From positions 496,001-560,000 of IMG/VR virus record IMGVR_UViG_3300050122_000263: 64,000 nucleotides of DNA. One strand, 5' to 3'. The notes below the pieces were generated by a model that had not been told where the DNA came from, did not search any database, and saw only the letters and a program-made list of their open reading frames with translations. Positions 2,972 through 59,555 of this stretch are shown one piece after another. The number at the start of each line of letters is the position of its first letter. Position 1 is the first letter of the stretch. Both the position numbers and the translations under genes were made by a program.

Positions 2972-4291
2972 TCATTCAGAGCCATGTGCCTGACATGGTA
3001 GAATGGCCTGGAACTTGCAGAACATGTCAGAGGTTATCTCGAACACCGGCATAGGCATGCTCAGCTGTGACAGGCTATCATCATCGCAGTGATCGGACAA
3101 GATGTAGCGCGCTCGTAGCCCAAAGATTAAGGGCACTAGATAGGGTAGCCGTGGAACATAGTGGAGAGCGCTGACATGGAGATCCGACATAGATGAATTC
3201 TGCTTCAACATTAAACGGATGGGGCGCCAACCCAGCAGATCATAACAGATGGCCAGGGATTTGTTGCTTCTGTTATGTGAAACAGCTGGTAACACTGGAA
3301 TTGGCGGCGCATAAGGTGAGATGAACTGATCCGCCAACTCTGGATGAAAAGGGCCTGGCTCCCAGCTGATTTGAATCTCATTCATAACATGTGCAATCTG
3401 CTGGCACTGAGTCACATCATGGCCAGCTAAGGAGCGTGCCAAATAACAGACATGGTCGATAATCTGCTTGGACTCAGGACTGGTATCATCAGCTAGAGTG
3501 TCGACACGCGACAGAAAAGCGTGGAATAATTGCAGATTTTTCTCCGGCTGGTGAGGCTCATGAGGCAGGCCCTCAATTATCTCAGGTGTAGGTTCAAGGA
3601 TAGCCTGCAGTAACTTCTTCCTATTGCTGACAATGTGGTTGAGTCGACCGGCACGTACTGGTTCAGTAATGTATTGAGACTGGCCTTGTAACTGAGTCAG
3701 AGTGTAGAGGGTGCTGTAGCTGGGGTAATGGATCTTACGGAACAGATCCAACAGAGCTAGGGTTAGATCGTGCTTGTTCAGGACTGTGGAGGGTTCAATC
3801 TGAATTCTATGGATTGAGGTCAAGAAGCATCCGTTTTGTGAGAAGGGTTGAGCCAGCTTAAGTAGTGACTCCAGCCCTGTTGGTGGGAAGGTCATGAAAA
3901 CCATGAGATAGAGTGAGAGATGATGGGCGTGGGTCTGAGCCTTCAGGCCTTGGGAGAGAGCCTCTCGTTGGATGGTGTACCAGATCAACTCAGTCAAATA
4001 ACAGATGAGTTGGTAGACTGAGCTACGCAGTGCAAACTCAGTGTGATAGCGCCTATAGAGCTGGTAATGGGTTGTTACTTCAGAAGTCTCTGTATCTGTT
4101 AGGGCTGGTATCTTAATGGCTCTAACCCCATTGACTCTGTCACCAAAGTCGTGATACAATCTGATCTGCCAGAGCAGGGGAGCCTTCCAAACTTGATGGA
4201 ACTGCTTGCAAGTCTGGATCAAGCTGTTACAGTCCTTGAGTTTGAGGGGATGAAGGATGTGACAAAGCACATGAGGCGGAAGCGATTGCAT
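2972..4291 (-). CDS. F-box domain protein
   Basis: N-terminal LPPHVLCHILHPLKLKDCNSLIQTCKQFHQVWKAPLLW matches the F-box consensus. Confidence 0.85.
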   Translation of the reverse strand: MQSLPPHVLCHILHPLKLKDCNSLIQTCKQFHQVWKAPLLWQIRLYHDFGDRVNGVRAIKIPALTDTETSEVTTHYQLYRRYHTEFALRSSVYQLICYLTELIWYTIQREALSQGLKAQTHAHHLSLYLMVFMTFPPTGLESLLKLAQPFSQNGCFLTSIHRIQIEPSTVLNKHDLTLALLDLFRKIHYPSYSTLYTLTQLQGQSQYITEPVRAGRLNHIVSNRKKLLQAILEPTPEIIEGLPHEPHQPEKNLQLFHAFLSRVDTLADDTSPESKQIIDHVCYLARSLAGHDVTQCQQIAHVMNEIQISWEPGPFHPELADQFISPYAPPIPVLPAVSHNRSNKSLAICYDLLGWRPIRLMLKQNSSMSDLHVSALHYVPRLPYLVPLIFGLRARYILSDHCDDDSLSQLSMPMPVFEITSDMFCKFQAILPCQAHGSE

Positions 4292-51068: not shown

Positions 51069-52046
51069 TTAGCGTGAGTTGAAGGTGAAAGAAACATCTT
51101 GTTTGTTATTGATGTACTTGAAGCGGCCACCCACCCAAATAGGAGTTCCTTCCACTTTGATCTGCATGGCCTTTAGGAAGTCTAGGATTGAGCGAATGAA
51201 GTTGAAGGTATAGATGTTGCCAGGACACTGTACTCCTGTCGGACCAAATGCCTTGTTGTTAGCGTTGTTAACTAGATCTCGATTACGATGCATAAAGACC
51301 AGCTGGCCATCAGATCCTCCTGTGTGGAAGATGGAGAATTGGGCCACCGCGATCAGGAAGTCGTTCTCCTCCAGACCAGCCATATCGCCCTTCCTATTGA
51401 GGATGGCTTTGGTAAAGTTATCCAACAAAGCCAGTTGTGGCACAAAGACCAGGAAACGCAGGTGACCTGGCAGGGAGCGAATAATACTCGACAGCCTGAA
51501 GACATTGCCAATATTACGGAAGAACACAGAAATACCAGTGATGAAGTCACCACGTAACACCGTCACTATACCACGCAGCACGACCAGGAGTTGGATCATT
51601 TCCTTCTCTACCTCATTGTCAACGATACCAAAGGCTCGATTCGTCTCGATCAGGATGGATTTGGATAGGAAATCCTCAAACTCCTCAATAGTGAGCTTCT
51701 TCTCATTGATATCGTGGAAGTAGTGACGCATATCAATACCTTTAGCTTTCTCTCCCTGCACGCGAAGTAGATCTTTCCTGACTTTATCTGGTAGTACGAT
51801 GCCCATACCAGAGAAGAGCTTGAACATCTCAATGAAGAAGCCAGAGGTGTAGATGTAGGTCTCATCCCGATCTGTCACCCAGTCGCGATCATCCTTGTAG
51901 CCTATGCCGAAGAAGGCAGCAGCCTTAGGGTGCTTATACAGATAGTCGAAGCCAAAACTCAGAATATAGAAGCGAAAGGGCTTGTAGAAGGCATACAGAG
52001 TAAGAAAAGCCACCACACTTGCTAGAAACCAGGTTAGCAGGGACAT
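51069..52046 (-). CDS. Short, divergent cytochrome P450-like protein
   Basis: N-terminal TM anchor; C-terminal AFGPTGVQCPGNIYT resembles the FxxGxxxCxG heme-thiolate motif at the expected position; no ExxR motif; only 325 aa. Confidence 0.6.
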   Translation of the reverse strand: MSLLTWFLASVVAFLTLYAFYKPFRFYILSFGFDYLYKHPKAAAFFGIGYKDDRDWVTDRDETYIYTSGFFIEMFKLFSGMGIVLPDKVRKDLLRVQGEKAKGIDMRHYFHDINEKKLTIEEFEDFLSKSILIETNRAFGIVDNEVEKEMIQLLVVLRGIVTVLRGDFITGISVFFRNIGNVFRLSSIIRSLPGHLRFLVFVPQLALLDNFTKAILNRKGDMAGLEENDFLIAVAQFSIFHTGGSDGQLVFMHRNRDLVNNANNKAFGPTGVQCPGNIYTFNFIRSILDFLKAMQIKVEGTPIWVGGRFKYINNKQDVSFTFNSR

Positions 52047-52179: not shown

Positions 52180-53223
52180 TTACACATGAACTTGCCCAGT
52201 CTCTAACGAGATCATATCAACTGCGGAGTTCGATTCAGTCAAGGTCTCATATGGTTCCTTACGCTCTCCCTTGATCCAAAGCGCCACACTCAGCAAACTA
52301 GCCACCAACGCGGGGATCATAATGTAGAGCGGATAATCAAGCCCTGGGTTAAGGTCTGGGAAGACAGAGTAGAAGATAGCAGTGGAGGGATTGACGATCG
52401 AGGTTGAGATCATGTTATAGTTGGTACTGATGGCATTGAGATAGACAGCTGCCACGAATAAACAGATGTAGGAAGCAGTGAATATCTCAAGCAGCAATGT
52501 AGGTACCAGTTTATGTACAAAGATGTCGCCACTGTCCCTGAAGGCTATTATAATATTGTCGGAGTAGCCGAAGAAGATATCAAGCCAGGAGAAGGCTACC
52601 ACTACCACGAACTGTACCAGACGGATGTAGAAGACTAGGCGTATCATGTTAAGGAAGCTGCCATCTCGGGTGTCAGTGATGTATTTCTCCTGCATCACAT
52701 TATGCCCGCTGCGGAAGGTGGTACCTATGGTGAAGATAGCAATCCAAAGGATGGAGGATGGGCTCCAATGAGAATAGATGGGAATAATTGAGATACCTAC
52801 GGAGGTGAACAGAAAAATTAGGCTCGGCACTATATACCACTTCTCATAGAAGACATTCTTCTTCAAAATATATTTAGTCATAATGATACTGGGGATGACA
52901 GCCAAGCCAGGTAGGATAGATTGCACCACAGCAGGGGTACGGATCGGATTAGCCGCATATAATGTGAAGATGCCGGCAAATGCATTACAGAGCCCTGCTA
53001 TCAATATAGTCTTCTTCTCTGGGACTCGCAACAGCTTCCAATCCTTGCGAGCCAAGAACAAGAGAATAAGGCCGAAGACAATACAGAAATGCGCCCCAGA
53101 GACTAGGATAACGAAGATCATGGATGGAAACATCTGCGCCAGAAATGTTACAATAATGCGCTGTGTAGCCCCAGTGATGCTGACGGCGAAAACCAGAAAT
53201 GCAATTCTGCGAGTTGCATCCAT
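52180..53223 (-). CDS. CRT-like (chloroquine-resistance-transporter family, DMT superfamily) transporter 1
   Basis: About 10 TM; AGLCNAF...YAANPIRTPAVVQSIL...IPSIIMTKYILKK...VMQEKY. Confidence 0.8.
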   Translation of the reverse strand: MDATRRIAFLVFAVSITGATQRIIVTFLAQMFPSMIFVILVSGAHFCIVFGLILLFLARKDWKLLRVPEKKTILIAGLCNAFAGIFTLYAANPIRTPAVVQSILPGLAVIPSIIMTKYILKKNVFYEKWYIVPSLIFLFTSVGISIIPIYSHWSPSSILWIAIFTIGTTFRSGHNVMQEKYITDTRDGSFLNMIRLVFYIRLVQFVVVVAFSWLDIFFGYSDNIIIAFRDSGDIFVHKLVPTLLLEIFTASYICLFVAAVYLNAISTNYNMISTSIVNPSTAIFYSVFPDLNPGLDYPLYIMIPALVASLLSVALWIKGERKEPYETLTESNSAVDMISLETGQVHV

Positions 53224-53294
53224 ATTTACGCGGTACTAATATACAAGATTGTTTAAAAGTGAAGCTGGCTCAAATTTTCTTGTCACTTTTAAAG

Positions 53295-54119
53295 ATGCAC
53301 ACAGATTACATTGCTGACGCAGTAGTCAAGAGCCGCGTCTATCCGGTGTCACTCAGCATTCTCTTTATCGGCCAGTTTCTGATCTTTGCTGGTGCACTTT
53401 GGGTCGCTGATGTTTTGCTAACCACTGTTTTCCACGGTCTGGATGGCTATAATGGACGCATGTATTCTTATCTGCTGATTCATATTCCCTTCATCTTTGT
53501 CGTGAGTGGTGTGAGGCAATGGGCTTGGTACTTGCTGACCTTTGTTCACGGTATCGCCCACGTAACCCACCCTGCCCTTTTTGGTGTAGTCTTCAACACC
53601 AATTATACACCTCTGTATGACTACATCGTGCATGCAGCACAATGTCTTTGTGTGTGGTACTGGAACCAGGACCATTTCCCCATCGGCGTGATGACCAGCC
53701 AACTCATGCTAACCGGTGCTGCTATCGCCCATGTGCACCAACCCTTTTTGCAGACATTCCTCTGGATTGTTATCTCTGGCTTTGGCGTTTATGGTACCCA
53801 ATACCATATGCAGCTTCTCAATGTCAAGAAACATCATCATATCTTCGTCTGTGGTTGGATCATCTGGCTGTCACCCTACCTCGGCTATCTTGTGCCAGGT
53901 CGCCTGCCTGAGTGGGACGCTGTCACCAACTACATCGGCCTATTTCGTGTTTGGTTTGTTGCCTTTTACCTGACCATGATCTCGGTTGGACAACATGATC
54001 CACTTGATGAAGCCAGAGAGGATCAGAGTATGCAGATTCAGCAGGGCAAGCGTGTAATCAGTTTCATCCAAACAGACACAGCCCCTGTTGAGGGTGACAG
54101 CAAGATCAAGGCAAATTAA
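53295..54119 (+). CDS. His-rich polytopic membrane protein of unknown family
   Basis: AAAGATG start at 53295; about 7 TM; HGIAHVTH, DYIVHAAQ, AHVH, QYH, HHH. Confidence 0.75.
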   Translation: MHTDYIADAVVKSRVYPVSLSILFIGQFLIFAGALWVADVLLTTVFHGLDGYNGRMYSYLLIHIPFIFVVSGVRQWAWYLLTFVHGIAHVTHPALFGVVFNTNYTPLYDYIVHAAQCLCVWYWNQDHFPIGVMTSQLMLTGAAIAHVHQPFLQTFLWIVISGFGVYGTQYHMQLLNVKKHHHIFVCGWIIWLSPYLGYLVPGRLPEWDAVTNYIGLFRVWFVAFYLTMISVGQHDPLDEAREDQSMQIQQGKRVISFIQTDTAPVEGDSKIKAN

Positions 54120-54124
54120 CCCCG

Positions 54125-54210
54125 GGCTCAACTGGAGTTGAGCCACACCTAGTGTTCTGATATGTATATATGTAAGCCGTGTAAATATTTCGCTACTTCA
54201 AGCGAAATAT
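54125..54210. terminator. Two hairpins between His-rich gene and CRT-like 2
   Basis: GGCTCAACT-gg-AGTTGAGCC (54125-44) and ATATTTCGCT-acttca-AGCGAAATAT (54185-210). Confidence 0.5.
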
Positions 54211-54275
54211 CCCCTATAATAGTGCAGAGAGTGGAAATGTTAAATCACTCTGCTTGTTTCTGAGCAAAAATTGTA

Positions 54276-55391
54276 ATGACTGCTGAAGTTGATGTGAAGT
54301 CCGGCCAGTTTGTGGCCTTGGCTATTGCCGTCATTACCCTCAATATGTTTCAGAGCATTGTTATCCCATTAGCAGCTCAATACTATACATGTCTCTACTT
54401 TATTTGTTTGATCACAGCTGTTGAGTTCTGTATAGTTATGTTTGTTGTTTTTATTTCGGTTAGACGTTACAATACTGGTAGCTGGACATTAGGGCCGATG
54501 CGAGCCAGGAAGACAGTTATCCTCTCCGGTATTTTTAATGCCTTAATGTCTATTATACTAGTGTATTGCTCAAATCCAGCGCGTACTCCTGTTATCATCC
54601 AATCTATCTTCACAGGCTTGGTTATTCTGCCCAGTGTTCTTTTCACCCGCATTGTGCTTAAGAAACAGGTCGTCTATGACAAACGCTTTATTATACCTAG
54701 CCTACTACTTTTAGCTGCCTCAATCGCCATCCCAATCGCGGGCATGGGAGCTGAAGGAACCTGGGCATCCTCCAATATCTACTGGAGCTCAGCCTATCTG
54801 TTTGGAGTAGTCTGCCGCAGTTACTTCAGCATCCTTCAGGAGAAGTATTTTGTTGAGACACAGGATGGCAGCATTGAGAATAAGCTCTCCTTAACTTTCT
54901 ATACTAGATTGGTGCAGCTTGTTGTTGTACTGGCTTGTTGCTGGCTAGAGTGGGTGGTTGGCTACACCGATCATCCCATCACCGCTTTCGGCGAGAGTTT
55001 TATGGCCATGTGGACTCAAGCGATAGGAGCTGCTCTGCTACAAGGCTTCATTGCTGCCTATCTCATTAACTATGTGTTGTCTATCTACCTCAATGCCATC
55101 AGCACCAACTACAGCATGATTATCTCAACGGCAGTGACGCCTGCTCTTGCTCTTTTCTTCGTTATCATACCAAGCCTCAATAATGGGCCTAAATGCAGCG
55201 TCGCTTTTGTTCTTCCAGCTCTGGCATGCTCCATTACTAGTGCTGTACTCTGGATTCTGGGTGAGAAGAAGACAGGCTACCAGATCATTGATAACAAAGG
55301 CATCAGTCCACCGGCCTCATTTGAAGGGACAATCGATCATATGAGTAAGATCTCAATTAACACAACATCTATTAGGAATGAGTCTGCCTGA
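54276..55391 (+). CDS. CRT-like transporter 2
   Basis: SGIFNAL...YCSNPARTPVIIQSIF...LPSVLFTRIVLKK...ILQEKY...YLNAISTNY; paralog of 52180-53223. Confidence 0.8.
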   Translation: MTAEVDVKSGQFVALAIAVITLNMFQSIVIPLAAQYYTCLYFICLITAVEFCIVMFVVFISVRRYNTGSWTLGPMRARKTVILSGIFNALMSIILVYCSNPARTPVIIQSIFTGLVILPSVLFTRIVLKKQVVYDKRFIIPSLLLLAASIAIPIAGMGAEGTWASSNIYWSSAYLFGVVCRSYFSILQEKYFVETQDGSIENKLSLTFYTRLVQLVVVLACCWLEWVVGYTDHPITAFGESFMAMWTQAIGAALLQGFIAAYLINYVLSIYLNAISTNYSMIISTAVTPALALFFVIIPSLNNGPKCSVAFVLPALACSITSAVLWILGEKKTGYQIIDNKGISPPASFEGTIDHMSKISINTTSIRNESA

Positions 55392-55462: not shown

Positions 55463-56971
55463 TTAATAGAGATAAGGGATGAGACGGTAGGGAACTGTCT
55501 CACAGTATTTGTGCCAAGAGAGGCCATACTTCTTGGCACAACGGGCTTCATCACGGTAACAACGGATGACTAGCAAGATGATCATGTAGATACAGTAGAA
55601 ATAAGGGATGATGCTGTCTGAGCCACAGGCTAAGCAATAGGCTGTTGACAGGATAATATCCCCTGTGTAGTTCATGTGACGGGCTACGCCCCATAGACCC
55701 TCAACCAGGAGTTTGCTCTCGTGGCAGCCAGACTCAGTTGTGTAGCTACACAGTACATGCTGCTGTCTGGCCTGTTCCTGCGGAGTTGAACGTCTGAAAC
55801 AGTCCTTCTGGCTATTGGCGACTCGGAAGATGACGTAACCCAGCAGTCCCAACAGTAGGATGGAAAAGAACTTAGAGTTACCGAGCGTGACTGGATGGTA
55901 GCTGAGATACTGAGCCTGTATAGTATAGGTGAAGGGCAACCAGACACAGTCTCCCCAAGCTAGCACCCAACCAAAGTGGTCATGGGCGATATCAATAGTG
56001 CGCAGATACCAATTCTCATTGAAGAAAAAGTCAAGCACATAGATAGCCTGTAATATATTAACCAGAACCATGGAGTCTGAGACATAACCGTAGCGCTTAG
56101 CTTGGGCTGCTGCAAAGGAGATGTTGATGAGAGTCCAGGCGATAATACCTGGTCGCCCGTTGAAAAAGAGCTTGAAATCCAAGTTGCCAATACGCGGGTT
56201 AAACTCGACGCCCATAATGAAATCATACACAAAGCTGCCTGAGTATTTATTATCACGTGGATGAGTTGGGGCATAATGGGCTTTTAGGTAAGACATAATG
56301 GACAACAAAAGACCGGTGATATTAGCTACAAGGAAGAGAGCCATCCAATTGTCCGCGATCCAAGTCACAGACAAGATACTGTAATAGCAGAGCATGACGA
56401 AGGTGATGTGAGTGATGAGCCAAGCCTGCAGCCCGTTAATATTGTAATAGAGCAGATGACCGGCAGGAGTTAACTGCCCCTGTTTGTGACCACCAACATA
56501 GCTAGGCGTCAGCTTATGTAAGCCATCAGGCAGCACAGCCAATAGAGTTTGCCAGGCAAACCAGCCAATTAGGGTGATTGTGACTGAGCCTATAGTATCT
56601 CTGATGTGAACGATGTCCAGGTAGCTGAGATTGTCTGAATTGGAGAGTTGGCTGTTCTCTGTAACAGCTACGAGGTGATCACCTCGCGACGATCCTGGGC
56701 TCAGGCCCAGGATCGGTACGAAATTCAACAGATTCTCGGCGAATGGCAGGAGATGATCATTTACACAGAGCATGATAAGACACAGGGCCAAGCCAGGCAC
56801 CCAAATGAACATAAGTAATACACCGCGTACAGTCAGCTTGCTTGGGCTATCGCAGCGGCCCCACGTCTTCTTCCCTATAGCATTAGTATTGCCTGTGGCT
56901 GGGGTAATATTGATATTCGAGCGAGAAGTGAAGTCTCCAGCACAGTCGCTATATGGAACATTAATGGACAT
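55463..56971 (-). CDS. DHCR7: 7-dehydrocholesterol (sterol delta-7) reductase, ERG4/ERG24 family
   Basis: GVEFNPR...DFKLFFNGRPGIIAWTLIN...DFFFNENWYLRTIDIAHDHFGWVLAWGDCVWLP...WGVARHMNYTGD...RDEARCAKKYG...VPYRLIP. The RTIDIxHDHFGW signature is DHCR7-type. First ATG at 56971. Confidence 0.95.
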   Translation of the reverse strand: MSINVPYSDCAGDFTSRSNINITPATGNTNAIGKKTWGRCDSPSKLTVRGVLLMFIWVPGLALCLIMLCVNDHLLPFAENLLNFVPILGLSPGSSRGDHLVAVTENSQLSNSDNLSYLDIVHIRDTIGSVTITLIGWFAWQTLLAVLPDGLHKLTPSYVGGHKQGQLTPAGHLLYYNINGLQAWLITHITFVMLCYYSILSVTWIADNWMALFLVANITGLLLSIMSYLKAHYAPTHPRDNKYSGSFVYDFIMGVEFNPRIGNLDFKLFFNGRPGIIAWTLINISFAAAQAKRYGYVSDSMVLVNILQAIYVLDFFFNENWYLRTIDIAHDHFGWVLAWGDCVWLPFTYTIQAQYLSYHPVTLGNSKFFSILLLGLLGYVIFRVANSQKDCFRRSTPQEQARQQHVLCSYTTESGCHESKLLVEGLWGVARHMNYTGDIILSTAYCLACGSDSIIPYFYCIYMIILLVIRCYRDEARCAKKYGLSWHKYCETVPYRLIPYLY

Positions 56972-57124
56972 TGCAGCTGTTTGCAACTTTCTTACGATCT
57001 CTCCACTACAATTGGCTGATCAGTTCTCGCTTCTTTCGCTGTTGTCATAGAATTAGCACTATGATTATGACTGATATAAAGTTATATCAGTCAGATTAAA
57101 GTCGTACTAGAAACAACCTAGATA

Positions 57125-57955: not shown

Positions 57956-59395
57956 TTAATTGTAAGTGTATTTCTCGAGCTTCCAACCGCTAACCAACAG
58001 CTCTGAGCTCTGCAACATGATGTTAGGAAGTGCTATTTTCGGCTCTTCCCGGGGCAGAAATGAGCCATAGATATGAACTGGATTGTTGCGAAGATACGGC
58101 TCATTTTCCTCTTGAGGTAATAGCTGTAAAGTTCCATAATCCCCATCATCGATTCTATATATTTTAGGATCTGGACACCATGATGATGTTACTTGTAATA
58201 TATCACTAGGTCTCTCGATAACTCTTACCCTATTATCCCAACATCGCAGATGGTGGGAGAGAGCCGTACAACCACCAATATTAGGAGGCATCAATTGAGG
58301 TAGAGTACCAACCATAACATATAACGGGCGCTCATGATACTCAGGCTTTTCAGGGAGTGGAAGATTGAGATATGTCACCTGAGCCTCCTCTTCTGCCTTA
58401 CGGACCGACAGGTTACGTATGACTAGCTCTGGTTGATCATCAAGCCAACCAAAGATTATGTTCATATCGAGTTGCACTCTATTGCTCTCCCAGGCGAGAC
58501 GCTGTTCATCATACATGATGCGGACTGGCAACTGACACCATCCATTCCAAAAATTTTGACTTATCTGTTGGCATGTCTTACAAAGACGCCTGAAGCGAGC
58601 AAGCTCGTGTATAGAAAGGTAGCCGAGGATCTCAGCGATGATAGGTTTGAGCAACAACATCCAGAGCTCATTTCGAGCATTCAGTTGATTGCGTAGATAA
58701 TATCTTGCAGTCCATCCCTCAGGCGTAGCTTGGGTATCATTACATGTGAAATTGGGAAGTTGTAGCAATTCTTCAACACATGGGGTAAGATCAGCATGTA
58801 TAACTCGCATGGCAAAACTAGGTACATTGCAAGACCTCCCGGTAAAAAGGGTCTTAATTGGAATAGTTGCATCGATATCCCCTTCTGTATACATTTTCAC
58901 TATCTGAACAGGCTCTGTCTTGGTTATCATCTTTACCACTCTTATTTGATTAACGGTGATAGAGTCGCGAGTTACACGACATTGATGATATGTTTGTATA
59001 AAATCATCAGTTATCACGGTTTCATAGCGCTGTAACCCCGCACGATAGAATTGAGGAAGGGTACCCTCAATGACCGACAGATTATGCGCTTTATCATTGA
59101 AGATGTCCATATTCCAGTAGCGCTTGATAAGCTCCATTTTGTTCGGGCTCCAACCATAGACAAGCAGAGTAGTGTCATAATACAACCAGTTAAAACTGGG
59201 AATTGTGAGCCAATAATAAATGCGGACGGGAAGAATCTGCCATTGCTGCCATAAGGTCTGAGCCTGTTGGCAGAACCATTTACATGTTTTTCTTAGATTA
59301 GCTAGATGGTATGGCCCAAGTTGTGACAGCAGATGTTGAACAGTCTTCTCCTCAAAGTTGGCCCATAACAGAGGAATGATTATCCCTGCGTCCAT
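57956..59395 (-). CDS. Tandemly duplicated F-box-like protein
   Basis: LLSQLGPYHLANLRKTCKWF...WQILPVRIYY and ILGYLSIHELARFRRLCKTC...WCQLPVRIMY. First ATG at 59395. Confidence 0.7.
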   Translation of the reverse strand: MDAGIIIPLLWANFEEKTVQHLLSQLGPYHLANLRKTCKWFCQQAQTLWQQWQILPVRIYYWLTIPSFNWLYYDTTLLVYGWSPNKMELIKRYWNMDIFNDKAHNLSVIEGTLPQFYRAGLQRYETVITDDFIQTYHQCRVTRDSITVNQIRVVKMITKTEPVQIVKMYTEGDIDATIPIKTLFTGRSCNVPSFAMRVIHADLTPCVEELLQLPNFTCNDTQATPEGWTARYYLRNQLNARNELWMLLLKPIIAEILGYLSIHELARFRRLCKTCQQISQNFWNGWCQLPVRIMYDEQRLAWESNRVQLDMNIIFGWLDDQPELVIRNLSVRKAEEEAQVTYLNLPLPEKPEYHERPLYVMVGTLPQLMPPNIGGCTALSHHLRCWDNRVRVIERPSDILQVTSSWCPDPKIYRIDDGDYGTLQLLPQEENEPYLRNNPVHIYGSFLPREEPKIALPNIMLQSSELLVSGWKLEKYTYN

Positions 59396-59555
59396 CACAA
59401 CTTTCACAACACTTCGTTCACAACATGTTAATCATTGTCCTCTACTCAACACATTTATCTACCTACAAATAGAGTCAAACTTAAACAGGAGACTTAATCA
59501 ATCGATACTTCATAACATTACCTATTGCGAAGATACGCCATATATGGTGCATTTT

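What the first reader, a model, noticed from the sequence alone, without database searches (positions are those of the whole stretch)
52180..55391. Two CRT-like transporters in a virus
Seen: paralogous 10-TM proteins with NP.RTP..+QSI and QEKY, facing outward around the His-rich gene. Known: the family includes PfCRT (vacuolar peptide/drug export), plant CLTs (glutathione/gamma-EC) and amoebozoan CRT-like proteins. I know of no characterised viral member. Inference: control of phagosome/vacuole solutes or thiol redox, possibly as a heterodimer.
Basis: partly seen in the sequence, partly recalled or inferred. Interest (0 to 1): 0.62.

Follow-up and report, generated by a model that had tools for sequence, protein, structure and literature searches.

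The report
Giant-virus CRT-like transporter pair
Two intact membrane-transporter genes in an uncultured giant virus from peat belong to a virus-associated sister branch of the chloroquine-resistance-transporter (CRT-like) family, and they sit in a gene cluster, repeated in other giant-virus-like contigs, with a histidine-rich membrane protein, a possible P450-like protein and a sterol reductase, so their job may be tied to membrane-lipid chemistry and not to the vacuolar peptide or thiol export first proposed.

Summary
Window 52180-53223(-) and 54276-55391(+) are intact paralogues (347 and 371 aa, 39% identity, E 2e-78). They are transcribed away from each other around a His-rich membrane-protein gene, on a 582-kb giant-virus record that carries an NCLDV capsid gene.

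Deeper methods do support CRT kinship:
- A profile of the family hits proteins that pass PF08627 at E 1e-20 to 1e-31.
- Profile-profile comparison gives E 4e-53 over 338 columns.
- CRT-like is the only specific Pfam family among 112 relatives.
- PfCRT is the top Foldseek match.

The pair nevertheless falls in a separate clade of 82 of the 118 sequences in the tree. That clade lacks the conserved loop cysteine of canonical CRTs. Every one of its members whose contig I examined lies in dense, giant-virus-like DNA. Unannotated relatives exist in Fadolivirus, Tupanvirus and others.

New here: the transporters recur next to the His-rich protein (11 of 40 transporter-led loci, about 27 of them informative), a roughly 320-aa possible P450-like protein, and an ERG4/ERG24 sterol reductase.

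Substrate, location and expression remain untested. The heterodimer idea has no support. I rate it a new variant of a known kind, of moderate interest.

The parts
52180..53223 (-). CRT-like DMT transporter, paralogue A (347 aa)
   Evidence: Intact ORF. 39% identical to B. Keeps 29 of 30 signature positions of the virus-associated clade. Groups with the L011 plus-strand copy in both trees.
54276..55391 (+). CRT-like DMT transporter, paralogue B (371 aa)
   Evidence: Intact ORF. AF2 ten-TM DMT fold. The family profile reaches PF08627-positive proteins at E 1e-20 to 1e-31. hhalign against the canonical CRT clade gives E 4e-53. Keeps 28 of 30 signature positions.
53199..54119 (+). His-rich polytopic membrane protein of unknown family. 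The true start is probably downstream, at the ATG at 53295 (Met33); the stored gene-call version is 286 aa, which would put its start near 53259.
   Evidence: HGxAHxxHP with an invariant H..H core, D..VH..QCLC, an invariant H at the usual YH and a conserved WD. No Pfam or PDB match. Adjacent to the transporter in the 12 loci listed in the report text. Single copy in the record.
51069..52046 (-). 'X': 325-aa protein with an N-terminal membrane anchor, possibly a very divergent, shortened cytochrome P450
   Evidence: E[TS]NR and FGPxGxxCPG motifs. In the ESM Atlas, 29 of 30 feature hits are P450 (score 0.91) and its own model matches a P450 at TM 0.60. The P450 HMM, the Pfam scan and the PDB profile search all find nothing. 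hhalign aligns only the Cys loop, E 0.11. Recurs in the module. Single copy in the record.
55463..56986 (-). ERG4/ERG24-family sterol reductase (507 aa from the TTG start; an ATG lies at 56971), with an N-terminal extension of about 130-160 aa
   Evidence: PF01222 E 2.4e-100. Best solved relative is the delta(14)-sterol reductase 4quv, E 4.6e-72. 61% identical to the reductase next to the transporter in L004. Also adjacent in L008, L015 and L025.

Best explanation
A and B are two functional, single-chain, ten-helix secondary carriers of the drug/metabolite-transporter (DMT) fold. They belong to a clade that is sister to the canonical CRT-like family (PfCRT, plant CLTs, protist CRT-like proteins); every member whose contig I examined lies in giant-virus-like DNA. 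Each would work by alternating access between its two five-helix halves. The substrate cavity would be lined by the family's conserved polar residues: R-T-P...Q at the TM3-TM4 junction, Q-E-K-Y at the end of TM6, and N..S.N-Y at the TM8-TM9 junction. They are components of a recurrent giant-virus gene module: transporter (one or two copies), a His-rich polytopic membrane protein (probably metal-binding), a membrane-anchored P450-like protein, and often a delta-14-type sterol reductase. My best guess is that during infection they sit in ER-derived or other internal membranes of the protist host. There they would move a small amphipathic or charged organic metabolite (substrate, product or cofactor) that serves those linked oxidoreductases in remodelling sterols or other membrane lipids. 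Shown here: gene integrity, paralogy, fold, CRT kinship, the separate clade, and the conserved neighbourhood. Inferred: transport activity, monomeric mechanism, membrane location, and the link to lipid or sterol chemistry. The substrate is unknown.
For: Integrity and paralogy. Fold: AF2 pTM 0.77; Foldseek top hit PfCRT 6ukj at E 4e-6; VIA-align TPT Z 27.8, PfCRT Z 26.1. CRT kinship: the profile search found 432 cluster representatives. Of 112 full-length hits, 21 match PF08627, best E 1.6e-36. PF08627-positive P0133, P0126, P0103 and P0107 were hit at E 1.4e-20, 3.3e-22, 1e-31 and 1.3e-29. hhalign A1 against A6 gives probability 100, E 4e-53. P0133 matches PfCRT at E 2.5e-9. About 20 signature positions are shared by both clades. 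Separate clade: a split with SH-aLRT 100; only 3 of 74 top-tier relatives are seen by PF08627. Module: gene orders in 13 loci and 30 more. Module-linked transporters lie on all deep branches of the clade, including the earliest. The flanking genes otherwise differ. Giant viruses are already reported to carry P450s and steroid reductases (PMC9270025, PMC11814380).
Against: Pfam's own CRT-like model does not recognise A or B. Fold alone cannot separate CRT from TPT or SLC35. No RNA data exist for this virus, so expression is unknown. The P450 reading of X rests on language-model features, a moderate structural match and a motif; HMM methods see nothing. The His-rich protein could not be folded or classified. 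About 60% of informative transporter loci lack the module, and some sit next to glycosyltransferases. Conserved neighbourhood among related viruses can partly reflect shared ancestry and not shared function. No DMT transporter is known to me to act in sterol metabolism.
Confidence: 0.5

Rival explanations
1. One reading: the pair acts like PfCRT or plant CLTs, exporting peptides, glutathione or gamma-EC, or cationic amphipaths across the phagosome, lysosome or vacuole membrane to control its solutes or thiol redox.
For: Closest characterised relatives by sequence profile and fold are CRT-like proteins. The R-T-P...Q and Q-E motifs align with PfCRT's R-T...Q-S and R-E. Relatives occur in isolates grown on amoebae, namely Fadolivirus on Vermamoeba (PMC8490762) and, from my own knowledge, Tupanvirus on Acanthamoeba and Vermamoeba; such viruses enter by phagocytosis (own knowledge).
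Against: The clade is a deep sister to canonical CRTs, with about 19% identity between the profiles. It lacks the conserved loop cysteine. No thiol, peptidase or vacuolar genes are linked to it. The conserved neighbours are an ER-type reductase, a P450-like protein and a His-rich membrane protein.
Confidence: 0.2
2. They are nucleotide-sugar or sugar-phosphate type carriers that supply the virus's own glycosylation machinery.
For: TPT is the top VIA-align match at Z 27.8, followed by SLC35 and Vrg4. Glycosyltransferase genes lie near the transporter in L004, L007 and L008 (GT92, LicD, chitin synthase) and in L021 (a GT cluster with an epimerase).
Against: No TPT, NST or UAA Pfam match in A, B or any of 112 relatives, while 21 match CRT-like. 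The glycosyltransferase neighbours are not conserved across loci, whereas the His-rich and X genes are.
Confidence: 0.08
3. A and B form an obligatory heterodimer, or a complex with the His-rich protein.
For: Two divergent copies flank the His-rich gene here and in L011. Two copies also lie in tandem in L034 and about 5 kb apart in L020.
Against: Each protein has the full ten-TM inverted-repeat fold. Most loci have one copy. The pairs in the window and in L011 are not the same two subtypes.
Confidence: 0.07
4. The genes are inert passengers, either recent host captures or host DNA on a mis-binned or 'provirus' contig.
For: IMG/VR flags the record as provirus. There is no expression evidence.
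Against: Both copies keep 28-29 of 30 clade signature positions despite sharing only 39% identity. Coding is dense and read here as uninterrupted ORFs, with short spacers. The capsid gene lies on the same contig. The same module appears in many other virus-like contigs, including a 1.6-Mb record deposited as 'uncultured virus'. Homologues occur in isolated viruses.
Confidence: 0.03

Closest known systems
PfCRT, Plasmodium falciparum chloroquine resistance transporter (PDB 6UKJ)
   Same: Ten-TM DMT fold. Best Foldseek match (E 4e-6, TM 0.63/0.66) and VIA-align Z 26.1 over 309 residues. Linked by sequence through P0133. The R-T...Q-S and (Q/R)-E motifs align.
   Different: Only 12-13% identity. 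No direct HMM hit. The viral proteins have a shorter TM7-TM8 loop without the conserved cysteine. The genomic context is different. PfCRT's vacuolar location and its peptide and drug substrates (my own knowledge) are untested here.
Canonical CRT-like proteins, Pfam PF08627 (for example Hemimastix P0133; plant CLT1-3, which PMC8464934 mentions together with glutathione)
   Same: hhalign probability 100, E 4e-53 over 338 columns. About 20 shared signature positions: G85, Y97, R103-T104-P105, Q109, Y134, W170, Q188-E189, G229, N273, S276, N278, W326, E330.
   Different: Sister clade, not nested. PF08627 does not detect A or B. The loop cysteine, present in 91% of the canonical clade, is absent. 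The clade has its own conserved residues: P101, K130, S142, K190-Y191.
Uncharacterised proteins of isolated or assembled Mimiviridae: Fadolivirus A0A7D3UWB8, Faunusvirus A0A3G4ZWR7, Tupanvirus A0A6N1NU95
   Same: Same fold and probably the same family: 38% identity, TM 0.84/0.87, E 3e-21 for Fadolivirus; 20-21% identity, TM 0.71-0.89 for the other two.
   Different: They are deposited as 'uncharacterized protein'. I could not read their genomes, so I do not know whether they carry the same module.
Triose-phosphate/phosphate translocator and SLC35 nucleotide-sugar transporters (5Y78, 9I20, 9S36, 6OH3)
   Same: Same ten-TM DMT fold, Z 20-28.
   Different: No sequence-level family match in A, B or 112 relatives. 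The similarity is at superfamily level only.

Membership tests
CRT-like (Pfam PF08627; DMT superfamily) | Match to the PF08627 model above its gathering score (26.9 bits) | tested here: not met
   No hit for A or B even at E<=10, and none in the six-frame search of the whole record. Only 3 of 74 close relatives match at E<=0.01.
CRT-like (Pfam PF08627; DMT superfamily) | Significant full-length homology to proteins that do pass PF08627 | tested here: met
   The A1 profile hits P0133 (PF08627, 126 bits), P0126, P0103 and P0107 at E 1.4e-20 to 1e-31 over about 280-315 profile positions. hhalign A1 against A6 gives E 4e-53.
CRT-like (Pfam PF08627; DMT superfamily) | Ten-TM DMT fold resembling PfCRT | tested here: met
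   AF2 model. PfCRT is the top Foldseek hit and scores Z 26.1. The fold is shared with other DMT families, so this feature does not discriminate.
CRT-like (Pfam PF08627; DMT superfamily) | Family signature residues (Y..S-P-x-R-T-P-x3-Q; N-V-x-Q-E; L-N-x-x-S-x-N; W and E in TM10) | tested here: met
   Column conservation in the canonical clade (35 sequences) and the virus-associated clade (77 sequences). Both A and B carry these residues.
CRT-like (Pfam PF08627; DMT superfamily) | Conserved cysteine-containing loop between TM7 and TM8 | tested here: not met
   Cys is present in 91% of the canonical clade and absent from the virus-associated clade, whose commonest residue there is Ile at 18%. 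The loop is shorter in A and B.
CRT-like (Pfam PF08627; DMT superfamily) | Phylogenetic position inside the canonical clade | tested here: not met
   There is a split with SH-aLRT 100. All rows I had labelled as PF08627 matches fall in the 36-row clade, and the further rows scanned later fall there too. A, B and all virus-context rows fall in the 82-row clade. The same split appears in the 43-row tree at 97. No outgroup from another DMT family was included, so sister versus nested depends on the root.
CRT-like (Pfam PF08627; DMT superfamily) | Transport of peptides, thiols or cationic drugs at an acidic vacuole | not testable with these tools
   Needs an expression and transport assay, plus localisation.
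Nucleotide-sugar / triose-phosphate transporters (PF03151, PF04142, PF08449) | Match to any of these Pfam models in the proteins or their relatives | tested here: not met
   None among A, B or the 112 relatives at E<=0.01.
EamA (PF00892) | EamA domain match stronger than any other family | tested here: not met
   7 of 112 relatives match. Both matches traced to a named protein are weaker co-hits on CRT-like proteins: P0122 has CRT 5.5e-15 against EamA 2.8e-8, and P0126 has 6.6e-25 against 9.5e-4.
Nucleocytoviricota genome | NCLDV double-jelly-roll major capsid protein on the same contig | tested here: met
   PF04451 over its cut-off at C1:262667. The 491-aa protein carries PF16903 plus PF04451 and has 182 relatives, some on Mb-scale contigs.
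Cytochrome P450 (for neighbour X) | PF00067 match, or a heme-thiolate Cys loop with an ExxR motif | tested here: inconclusive
   No HMM match. E[TS]NR and FGPxGxxCPG motifs are present. ESM Atlas gives 29 of 30 P450 feature hits and TM 0.60. hhalign aligns the Cys loop only, E 0.11.

The most novel reading that the evidence does not exclude
The transporter, the His-rich protein, the P450-like protein and the sterol reductase form a virus-encoded membrane pathway that rewrites host sterols or another membrane lipid. In it, CRT-family carriers have been recruited to move a lipid-pathway intermediate, heme or iron, or a redox cofactor across ER-derived membranes. That role is not known for any DMT or CRT protein, and it could shed light on the still-debated native function of the CRT family.
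Probability: 0.2. Interest if true: 0.8.

Novelty: new variant of a known kind. Interest (0 to 1): 0.55.

Why it matters
CRT-like proteins are known mainly through malaria drug resistance and plant glutathione export, and their native roles in most protists remain unclear. This analysis points to three things.

1. There is a sizeable unannotated branch of the family: 82 of the 118 sequences in the tree, most of them representatives of clusters at 50% identity. Every member whose contig I examined lies in giant-virus-like DNA. The standard Pfam model misses this branch.

2. The branch is genetically tied to a rare His-rich membrane protein, a P450-like protein and a sterol reductase. That gives a concrete, testable hypothesis about what such carriers serve.

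3. Homologues exist in cultivable viruses: Fadolivirus on Vermamoeba, and Tupanvirus on Acanthamoeba and Vermamoeba. Experiments are therefore feasible.

For annotation, it shows that PF08627 under-calls this clade. For giant-virus biology, it adds a membrane-transport component to the reported viral P450 and steroid-reductase repertoire.

Tried and rejected
- Pfam on A and B at E<=10 returned only noise (CrcB, MscL).
- phmmer and a profile hmmsearch of A1 against PDB sequences found no DMT hit. The canonical-clade profile A6 also missed PfCRT; only the single protein P0133 reached it.
- The word-index search found just four close relatives. I therefore used the costly exhaustive profile search, because the family scans had left the protein unassigned.
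- The AF2 model of the His-rich protein was unusable (pLDDT 47), so I ran no fold search on it. Its Atlas hits were below the lead level.
- Complex prediction of B with the His-rich protein returned no verdict. It counts neither for nor against binding.
- The P450 HMM against the whole record, the PDB profile search and the Pfam scan of seven X members all found nothing.
- IMG/VR scans found only the same virus plus one GVMAG contig. The broad alignment A3 was too diverse to make search patterns.
- No RNA runs hold the region, so expression could not be examined. Laying contigs showed only identity across peat samples.
- The AU test did not reject A and B as sister genes (p 0.10). The claim that the duplication is ancient rests on tree topology and identity values only.
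- I inspected the intergenic sequences by eye for a shared promoter motif and saw nothing convincing.
Full report
**1. What is there**

The window is bases 496001-560000 of a 582,007-bp IMG/VR virus record. The record is flagged 'provirus', and CheckV estimates it 61% complete.

The record encodes a genuine NCLDV major capsid protein. PF04451 passes its cut-off. The 491-aa protein carries PF16903 plus PF04451 and has 182 relatives, several on contigs of 1.1-1.6 Mb.

The window is densely coded on both strands and reads as uninterrupted ORFs. Most ORFs have no family match, and there are a few F-box proteins. This is typical of the accessory end of a giant-virus genome.

The 6-kb stretch around the finding is present, letter for letter, in contigs of several peat metagenomes. 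One is a single 34-kb contig, and an independent sample holds it in pieces. No RNA run holds it.

**2. The observation**

- ORF A is 52180-53223 on the minus strand, 347 aa. ORF B is 54276-55391 on the plus strand, 371 aa. Both are intact.
- They share 39% identity over 311 residues, E 2e-78.
- They are transcribed away from each other around a 306-aa ORF (53199-54119, plus strand) with 16 histidines.
- The quoted motifs are present in both: NP-x-RTP-x3-QSI and QEKY.
- These two are the only copies in the record.

**3. Fold**

An AlphaFold2 model of B was built on a five-sequence alignment. It scored pLDDT 75 and pTM 0.77, and shows ten long helices plus a short helix in the TM7-TM8 loop.

- Foldseek against the PDB puts PfCRT (6ukj) first (E 4e-6), followed by Vrg4, the triose-phosphate translocator and the CMP-sialic acid transporter.
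- VIA-align gives TPT Z 27.8, PfCRT Z 26.1, SLC35B1 about 24, LicB about 23 and Vrg4 about 22. It then drops to Z below 8 for unrelated transporters.
- The ESM Atlas shape search returns EamA and TPT clusters.

The fold is therefore the ten-TM DMT fold. Fold alone does not say which DMT family.

**4. Family**

PF08627 does not match A or B even at E<=10, and it does not match anywhere in the record. HMMER against PDB sequences also finds nothing.

The word-index search found only four close relatives, plus one 513-aa protein (P0005, E 1e-4). That protein is itself a sub-threshold PF08627 match. Because this left the protein unassigned, I ran the exhaustive profile search with alignment A1.

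- It found 432 cluster representatives at E<=1e-3, of which 99 were at E<=1e-30.
- I scanned 112 full-length hits with Pfam. The only families matched by more than one protein were CRT-like (21 proteins, best E 1.6e-36) and EamA (7).
- The two EamA matches I traced to named proteins are weaker co-hits on CRT-like proteins.
- Proteins that clearly pass PF08627 are hit by the viral profile over nearly full length. Examples are Hemimastix P0133 at 126 bits, and P0126, P0103, P0107, P0134, P0122 and P0150. Their E-values with the viral profile run from about 1e-17 to 1e-31.
- Profile-profile comparison of A1 with a 36-sequence alignment of that clade gives probability 100, E 4e-53 over 338 columns.
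- P0133 in turn matches PfCRT at E 2.5e-9.
- About 20 positions are conserved in both clades. They include R103-T104-P105, Q109, Q188-E189, N273, S276, N278, W326 and E330 in B's numbering.
- PfCRT aligns R-T...Q-S and R-E at the first two of these motifs.

**5. A distinct branch, not an ordinary member**

In a 118-sequence tree, a branch with SH-aLRT 100 separates two clades. One has 36 rows and holds every PF08627-positive row I had identified. The other has 82 rows and holds A, B and every protein whose contig I examined.

- Only 3 of 74 top-tier relatives are seen by PF08627, against 18 of 38 in the lower tier.
- The canonical clade has a cysteine in the TM7-TM8 loop in 91% of sequences. 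The virus-associated clade lacks it and has a shorter loop.
- The virus-associated clade has its own conserved residues: P101, K130, S142 and K190-Y191.
- No outgroup from another DMT family was included. 'Sister' therefore holds only if the root lies between the two clades.

Every contig I examined for the 82-row clade looks viral. Coding is dense and read as uninterrupted ORFs, many ORFs have no family, and giant-virus-type genes occur here and there, such as an Evr1/Alr thiol oxidase and F-box or FNIP proteins. A D5-type primase gene lies on L013, a locus reached through the His-rich gene that has no transporter.

BFVD shows same-fold, probably same-family proteins in several giant viruses, all deposited as uncharacterised:
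- Fadolivirus: 38% identity, TM 0.84/0.87.
- Faunusvirus and Tupanvirus: 20-21% identity.
- Bodo saltans virus, and a Yasminevirus fragment.

Paper searches pairing the CRT name with giant viruses found nothing. One search returned no paper, and none of the 15 papers listed held the CRT term.

**6. The two copies**

Both copies keep almost all of the 30 positions that are at least 80% conserved in the other 75 clade members. A keeps 29 and B keeps 28. Both look functional.

B is closer to proteins from other contigs than to A: 62% to P0002 and 46-47% to P0003 and P0004, against 39% to A.

In both trees A groups with the plus-strand copy of locus L011, and B groups with the L004, L008 and L025 copies. 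An AU test does not reject A plus B as sisters (p 0.10). The duplication is therefore old, but its exact placement is not settled.

**7. Conserved neighbourhood (new here)**

The gene order in the window is:
- X (51069-52046, minus strand)
- A (minus strand)
- His-rich protein (plus strand)
- B (plus strand)
- ERG4/ERG24 reductase (55463-56986, minus strand)

I scanned the ORFs of 42 other loci with profiles of each family. The orders found were:

| Locus | Order |
|---|---|
| L004, L008 | His-T-ERG |
| L011 | X-T-His-T |
| L012 | His-T-X |
| L015 | ERG-His-T-X |
| L022 | X-T-His |
| L025 | His-X-T-ERG |
| L026 | His-X-X-T |
| L024, L032, L042 | His-T |
| L028 | X-T |
| L010 | T, a true P450, X, X |
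| L013, L017 | His-X, no transporter |

- Forty loci were found through the transporter. By my count from the locus lengths, about 27 have enough flank to judge.
- Among the 40, the His-rich gene is adjacent in 11, X in 8 and the reductase in 4.
- Of the 14 distinct loci that carry the His-rich gene, 12 have the transporter next to it and 9 have X.
- The His-rich family is rare. The word search found 13 proteins.
- X and the His-rich gene are single-copy in this record, and both lie in this cluster.
- Order and orientation vary, and the other neighbours differ. Module-linked transporters lie on every deep branch of the clade, including the earliest, L015.
- The linkage is therefore old and has been maintained. 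It is not universal: L020, L021, L023, L027, L029 and others lack it. L021 and L004 have glycosyltransferase neighbours.

**8. What the partners are**

*The reductase.* It is a clear ERG4/ERG24 member (E 2.4e-100). Its nearest solved relative is the delta(14)-sterol reductase 4quv (E 4.6e-72).

*X.* It has an N-terminal hydrophobic anchor, an E[TS]NR motif and an invariant FGPxGxxCPG motif.
- For a P450 reading: the ESM Atlas returns P450 for 29 of 30 feature hits (score 0.91), and its own model matches a P450 at TM 0.60.
- Against it: the P450 HMM, the Pfam scan and the PDB profile search find nothing. hhalign aligns only the Cys loop, E 0.11.
- I treat 'divergent, shortened P450' as a lead and not a finding.

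*The His-rich protein.* It has about seven or eight predicted helices. Across 16 sequences it has invariant H97, H101, D121, H125, Q128-C129 and H183. The third His of the HGxAHxxHP motif is invariant only in the five-sequence set. This pattern suggests a metal or heme site. It has no detectable relatives in Pfam or the PDB and could not be folded.

Reviews already note P450s and steroid reductases in giant viruses, and propose that they modulate sterols or lipids (PMC9270025, PMC11814380).

**9. Mechanism**

*Shown:* two intact DMT-fold genes of CRT lineage in a conserved module.

*Inferred:*
- Each protein is a self-sufficient alternating-access carrier.
- The conserved polar residues at the TM3-TM4 junction, at the end of TM6 and at the TM8-TM9 junction line the substrate path. 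The first and third lie at equivalent spots in the two halves of the protein.
- The membrane is ER-derived or another internal membrane, which is where anchored P450s and ERG4/24 reductases work in eukaryotes (general knowledge).
- The cargo is a small amphipathic or charged metabolite used or produced by the linked enzymes.

I put about 0.5 on this package. Most of the uncertainty lies in the last two steps. A nucleotide-sugar role gets about 0.08, and an obligate heterodimer about 0.07.

**10. Limits**

- There are no expression data, no substrate test and no rooted outgroup tree.
- The trees used the 'quick' method.
- The His-rich and X families are unclassified.
- I could not read the named giant-virus genomes to check for the module.
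- I followed the operators' size limit for read laying (6,000 bases).

Noticed in passing
window 51069-52046 (-): A 325-aa protein ('X') with an N-terminal anchor and E[TS]NR and FGPxGxxCPG motifs. ESM Atlas features and structure point to cytochrome P450, but no HMM sees it. It may be a very divergent, shortened viral P450. It recurs beside the transporter and the His-rich gene in many contigs.
   Followed up: partly
window 53199-54119 (+): A rare His-rich polytopic membrane-protein family with motifs HGxAHxxHP, D..VH..QCLC, YH and WD. It has no Pfam or PDB relative and could not be folded by AF2. It is almost always next to the transporter and/or X. The first ATG overlaps A's start by 25 bases, so the real start is probably further downstream: Met33 at 53295, or the start of the stored 286-aa gene-call version near 53259.
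   Followed up: partly
window 55463-56986 (-): An ERG4/ERG24 sterol reductase, closest to delta-14 reductases. It has an N-terminal extension of about 130-160 aa that the 431-aa homologue in L004 lacks. The start codon is ambiguous: TTG at 56986 or ATG at 56971.
   Followed up: partly
window 54783-54815 (B residues 170-180): The database representative P0001 is 99% identical to B. It differs only at four clustered positions in TM6, written window-to-P0001: W170R, A173D, Y174N and C180F. W170 is 91-97% conserved across the family. This could be a strain variant or an assembly error in the other record.
   Followed up: no
L010 9596-12693: In an NCBI-deposited contig, the transporter is followed by a bona fide Pfam P450 and then two tandem X copies, one of them partial.
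   Followed up: no
L034 2494-4779; L020 2322-9628; L011 2737-6014: Several contigs carry two transporter copies. They are often of different subclades (L034, L011) and sometimes recent duplicates (L020). Multi-copy sets are therefore common in this clade.
   Followed up: partly
window 57956-59407 (-) and 2972-4291 (-): F-box domain proteins; the first has two F-box-like stretches. They are typical of accessory gene families in giant viruses that infect amoebae.
   Followed up: no
G000:C1:287448-287867 (outside the window): The record also encodes a fatty-acid-hydroxylase or sterol-desaturase superfamily protein (PF04116, E 4e-13, 176-aa frame), far from the cluster.
   Followed up: no
L004 1-7200; L021 2567-7368: Some transporter loci lie near glycosylation genes: chitin synthase, LicD, GT92, GT1/GT4, GT25 and an epimerase. 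This keeps a sugar-related role possible for part of the clade.
   Followed up: no
whole record G000: IMG/VR flags the 582-kb record as 'provirus', and CheckV puts it at 61% complete. A second record, IMGVR_UViG_3300050123_000192 (391 kb), holds B's gene at 99-100% identity.
   Followed up: no
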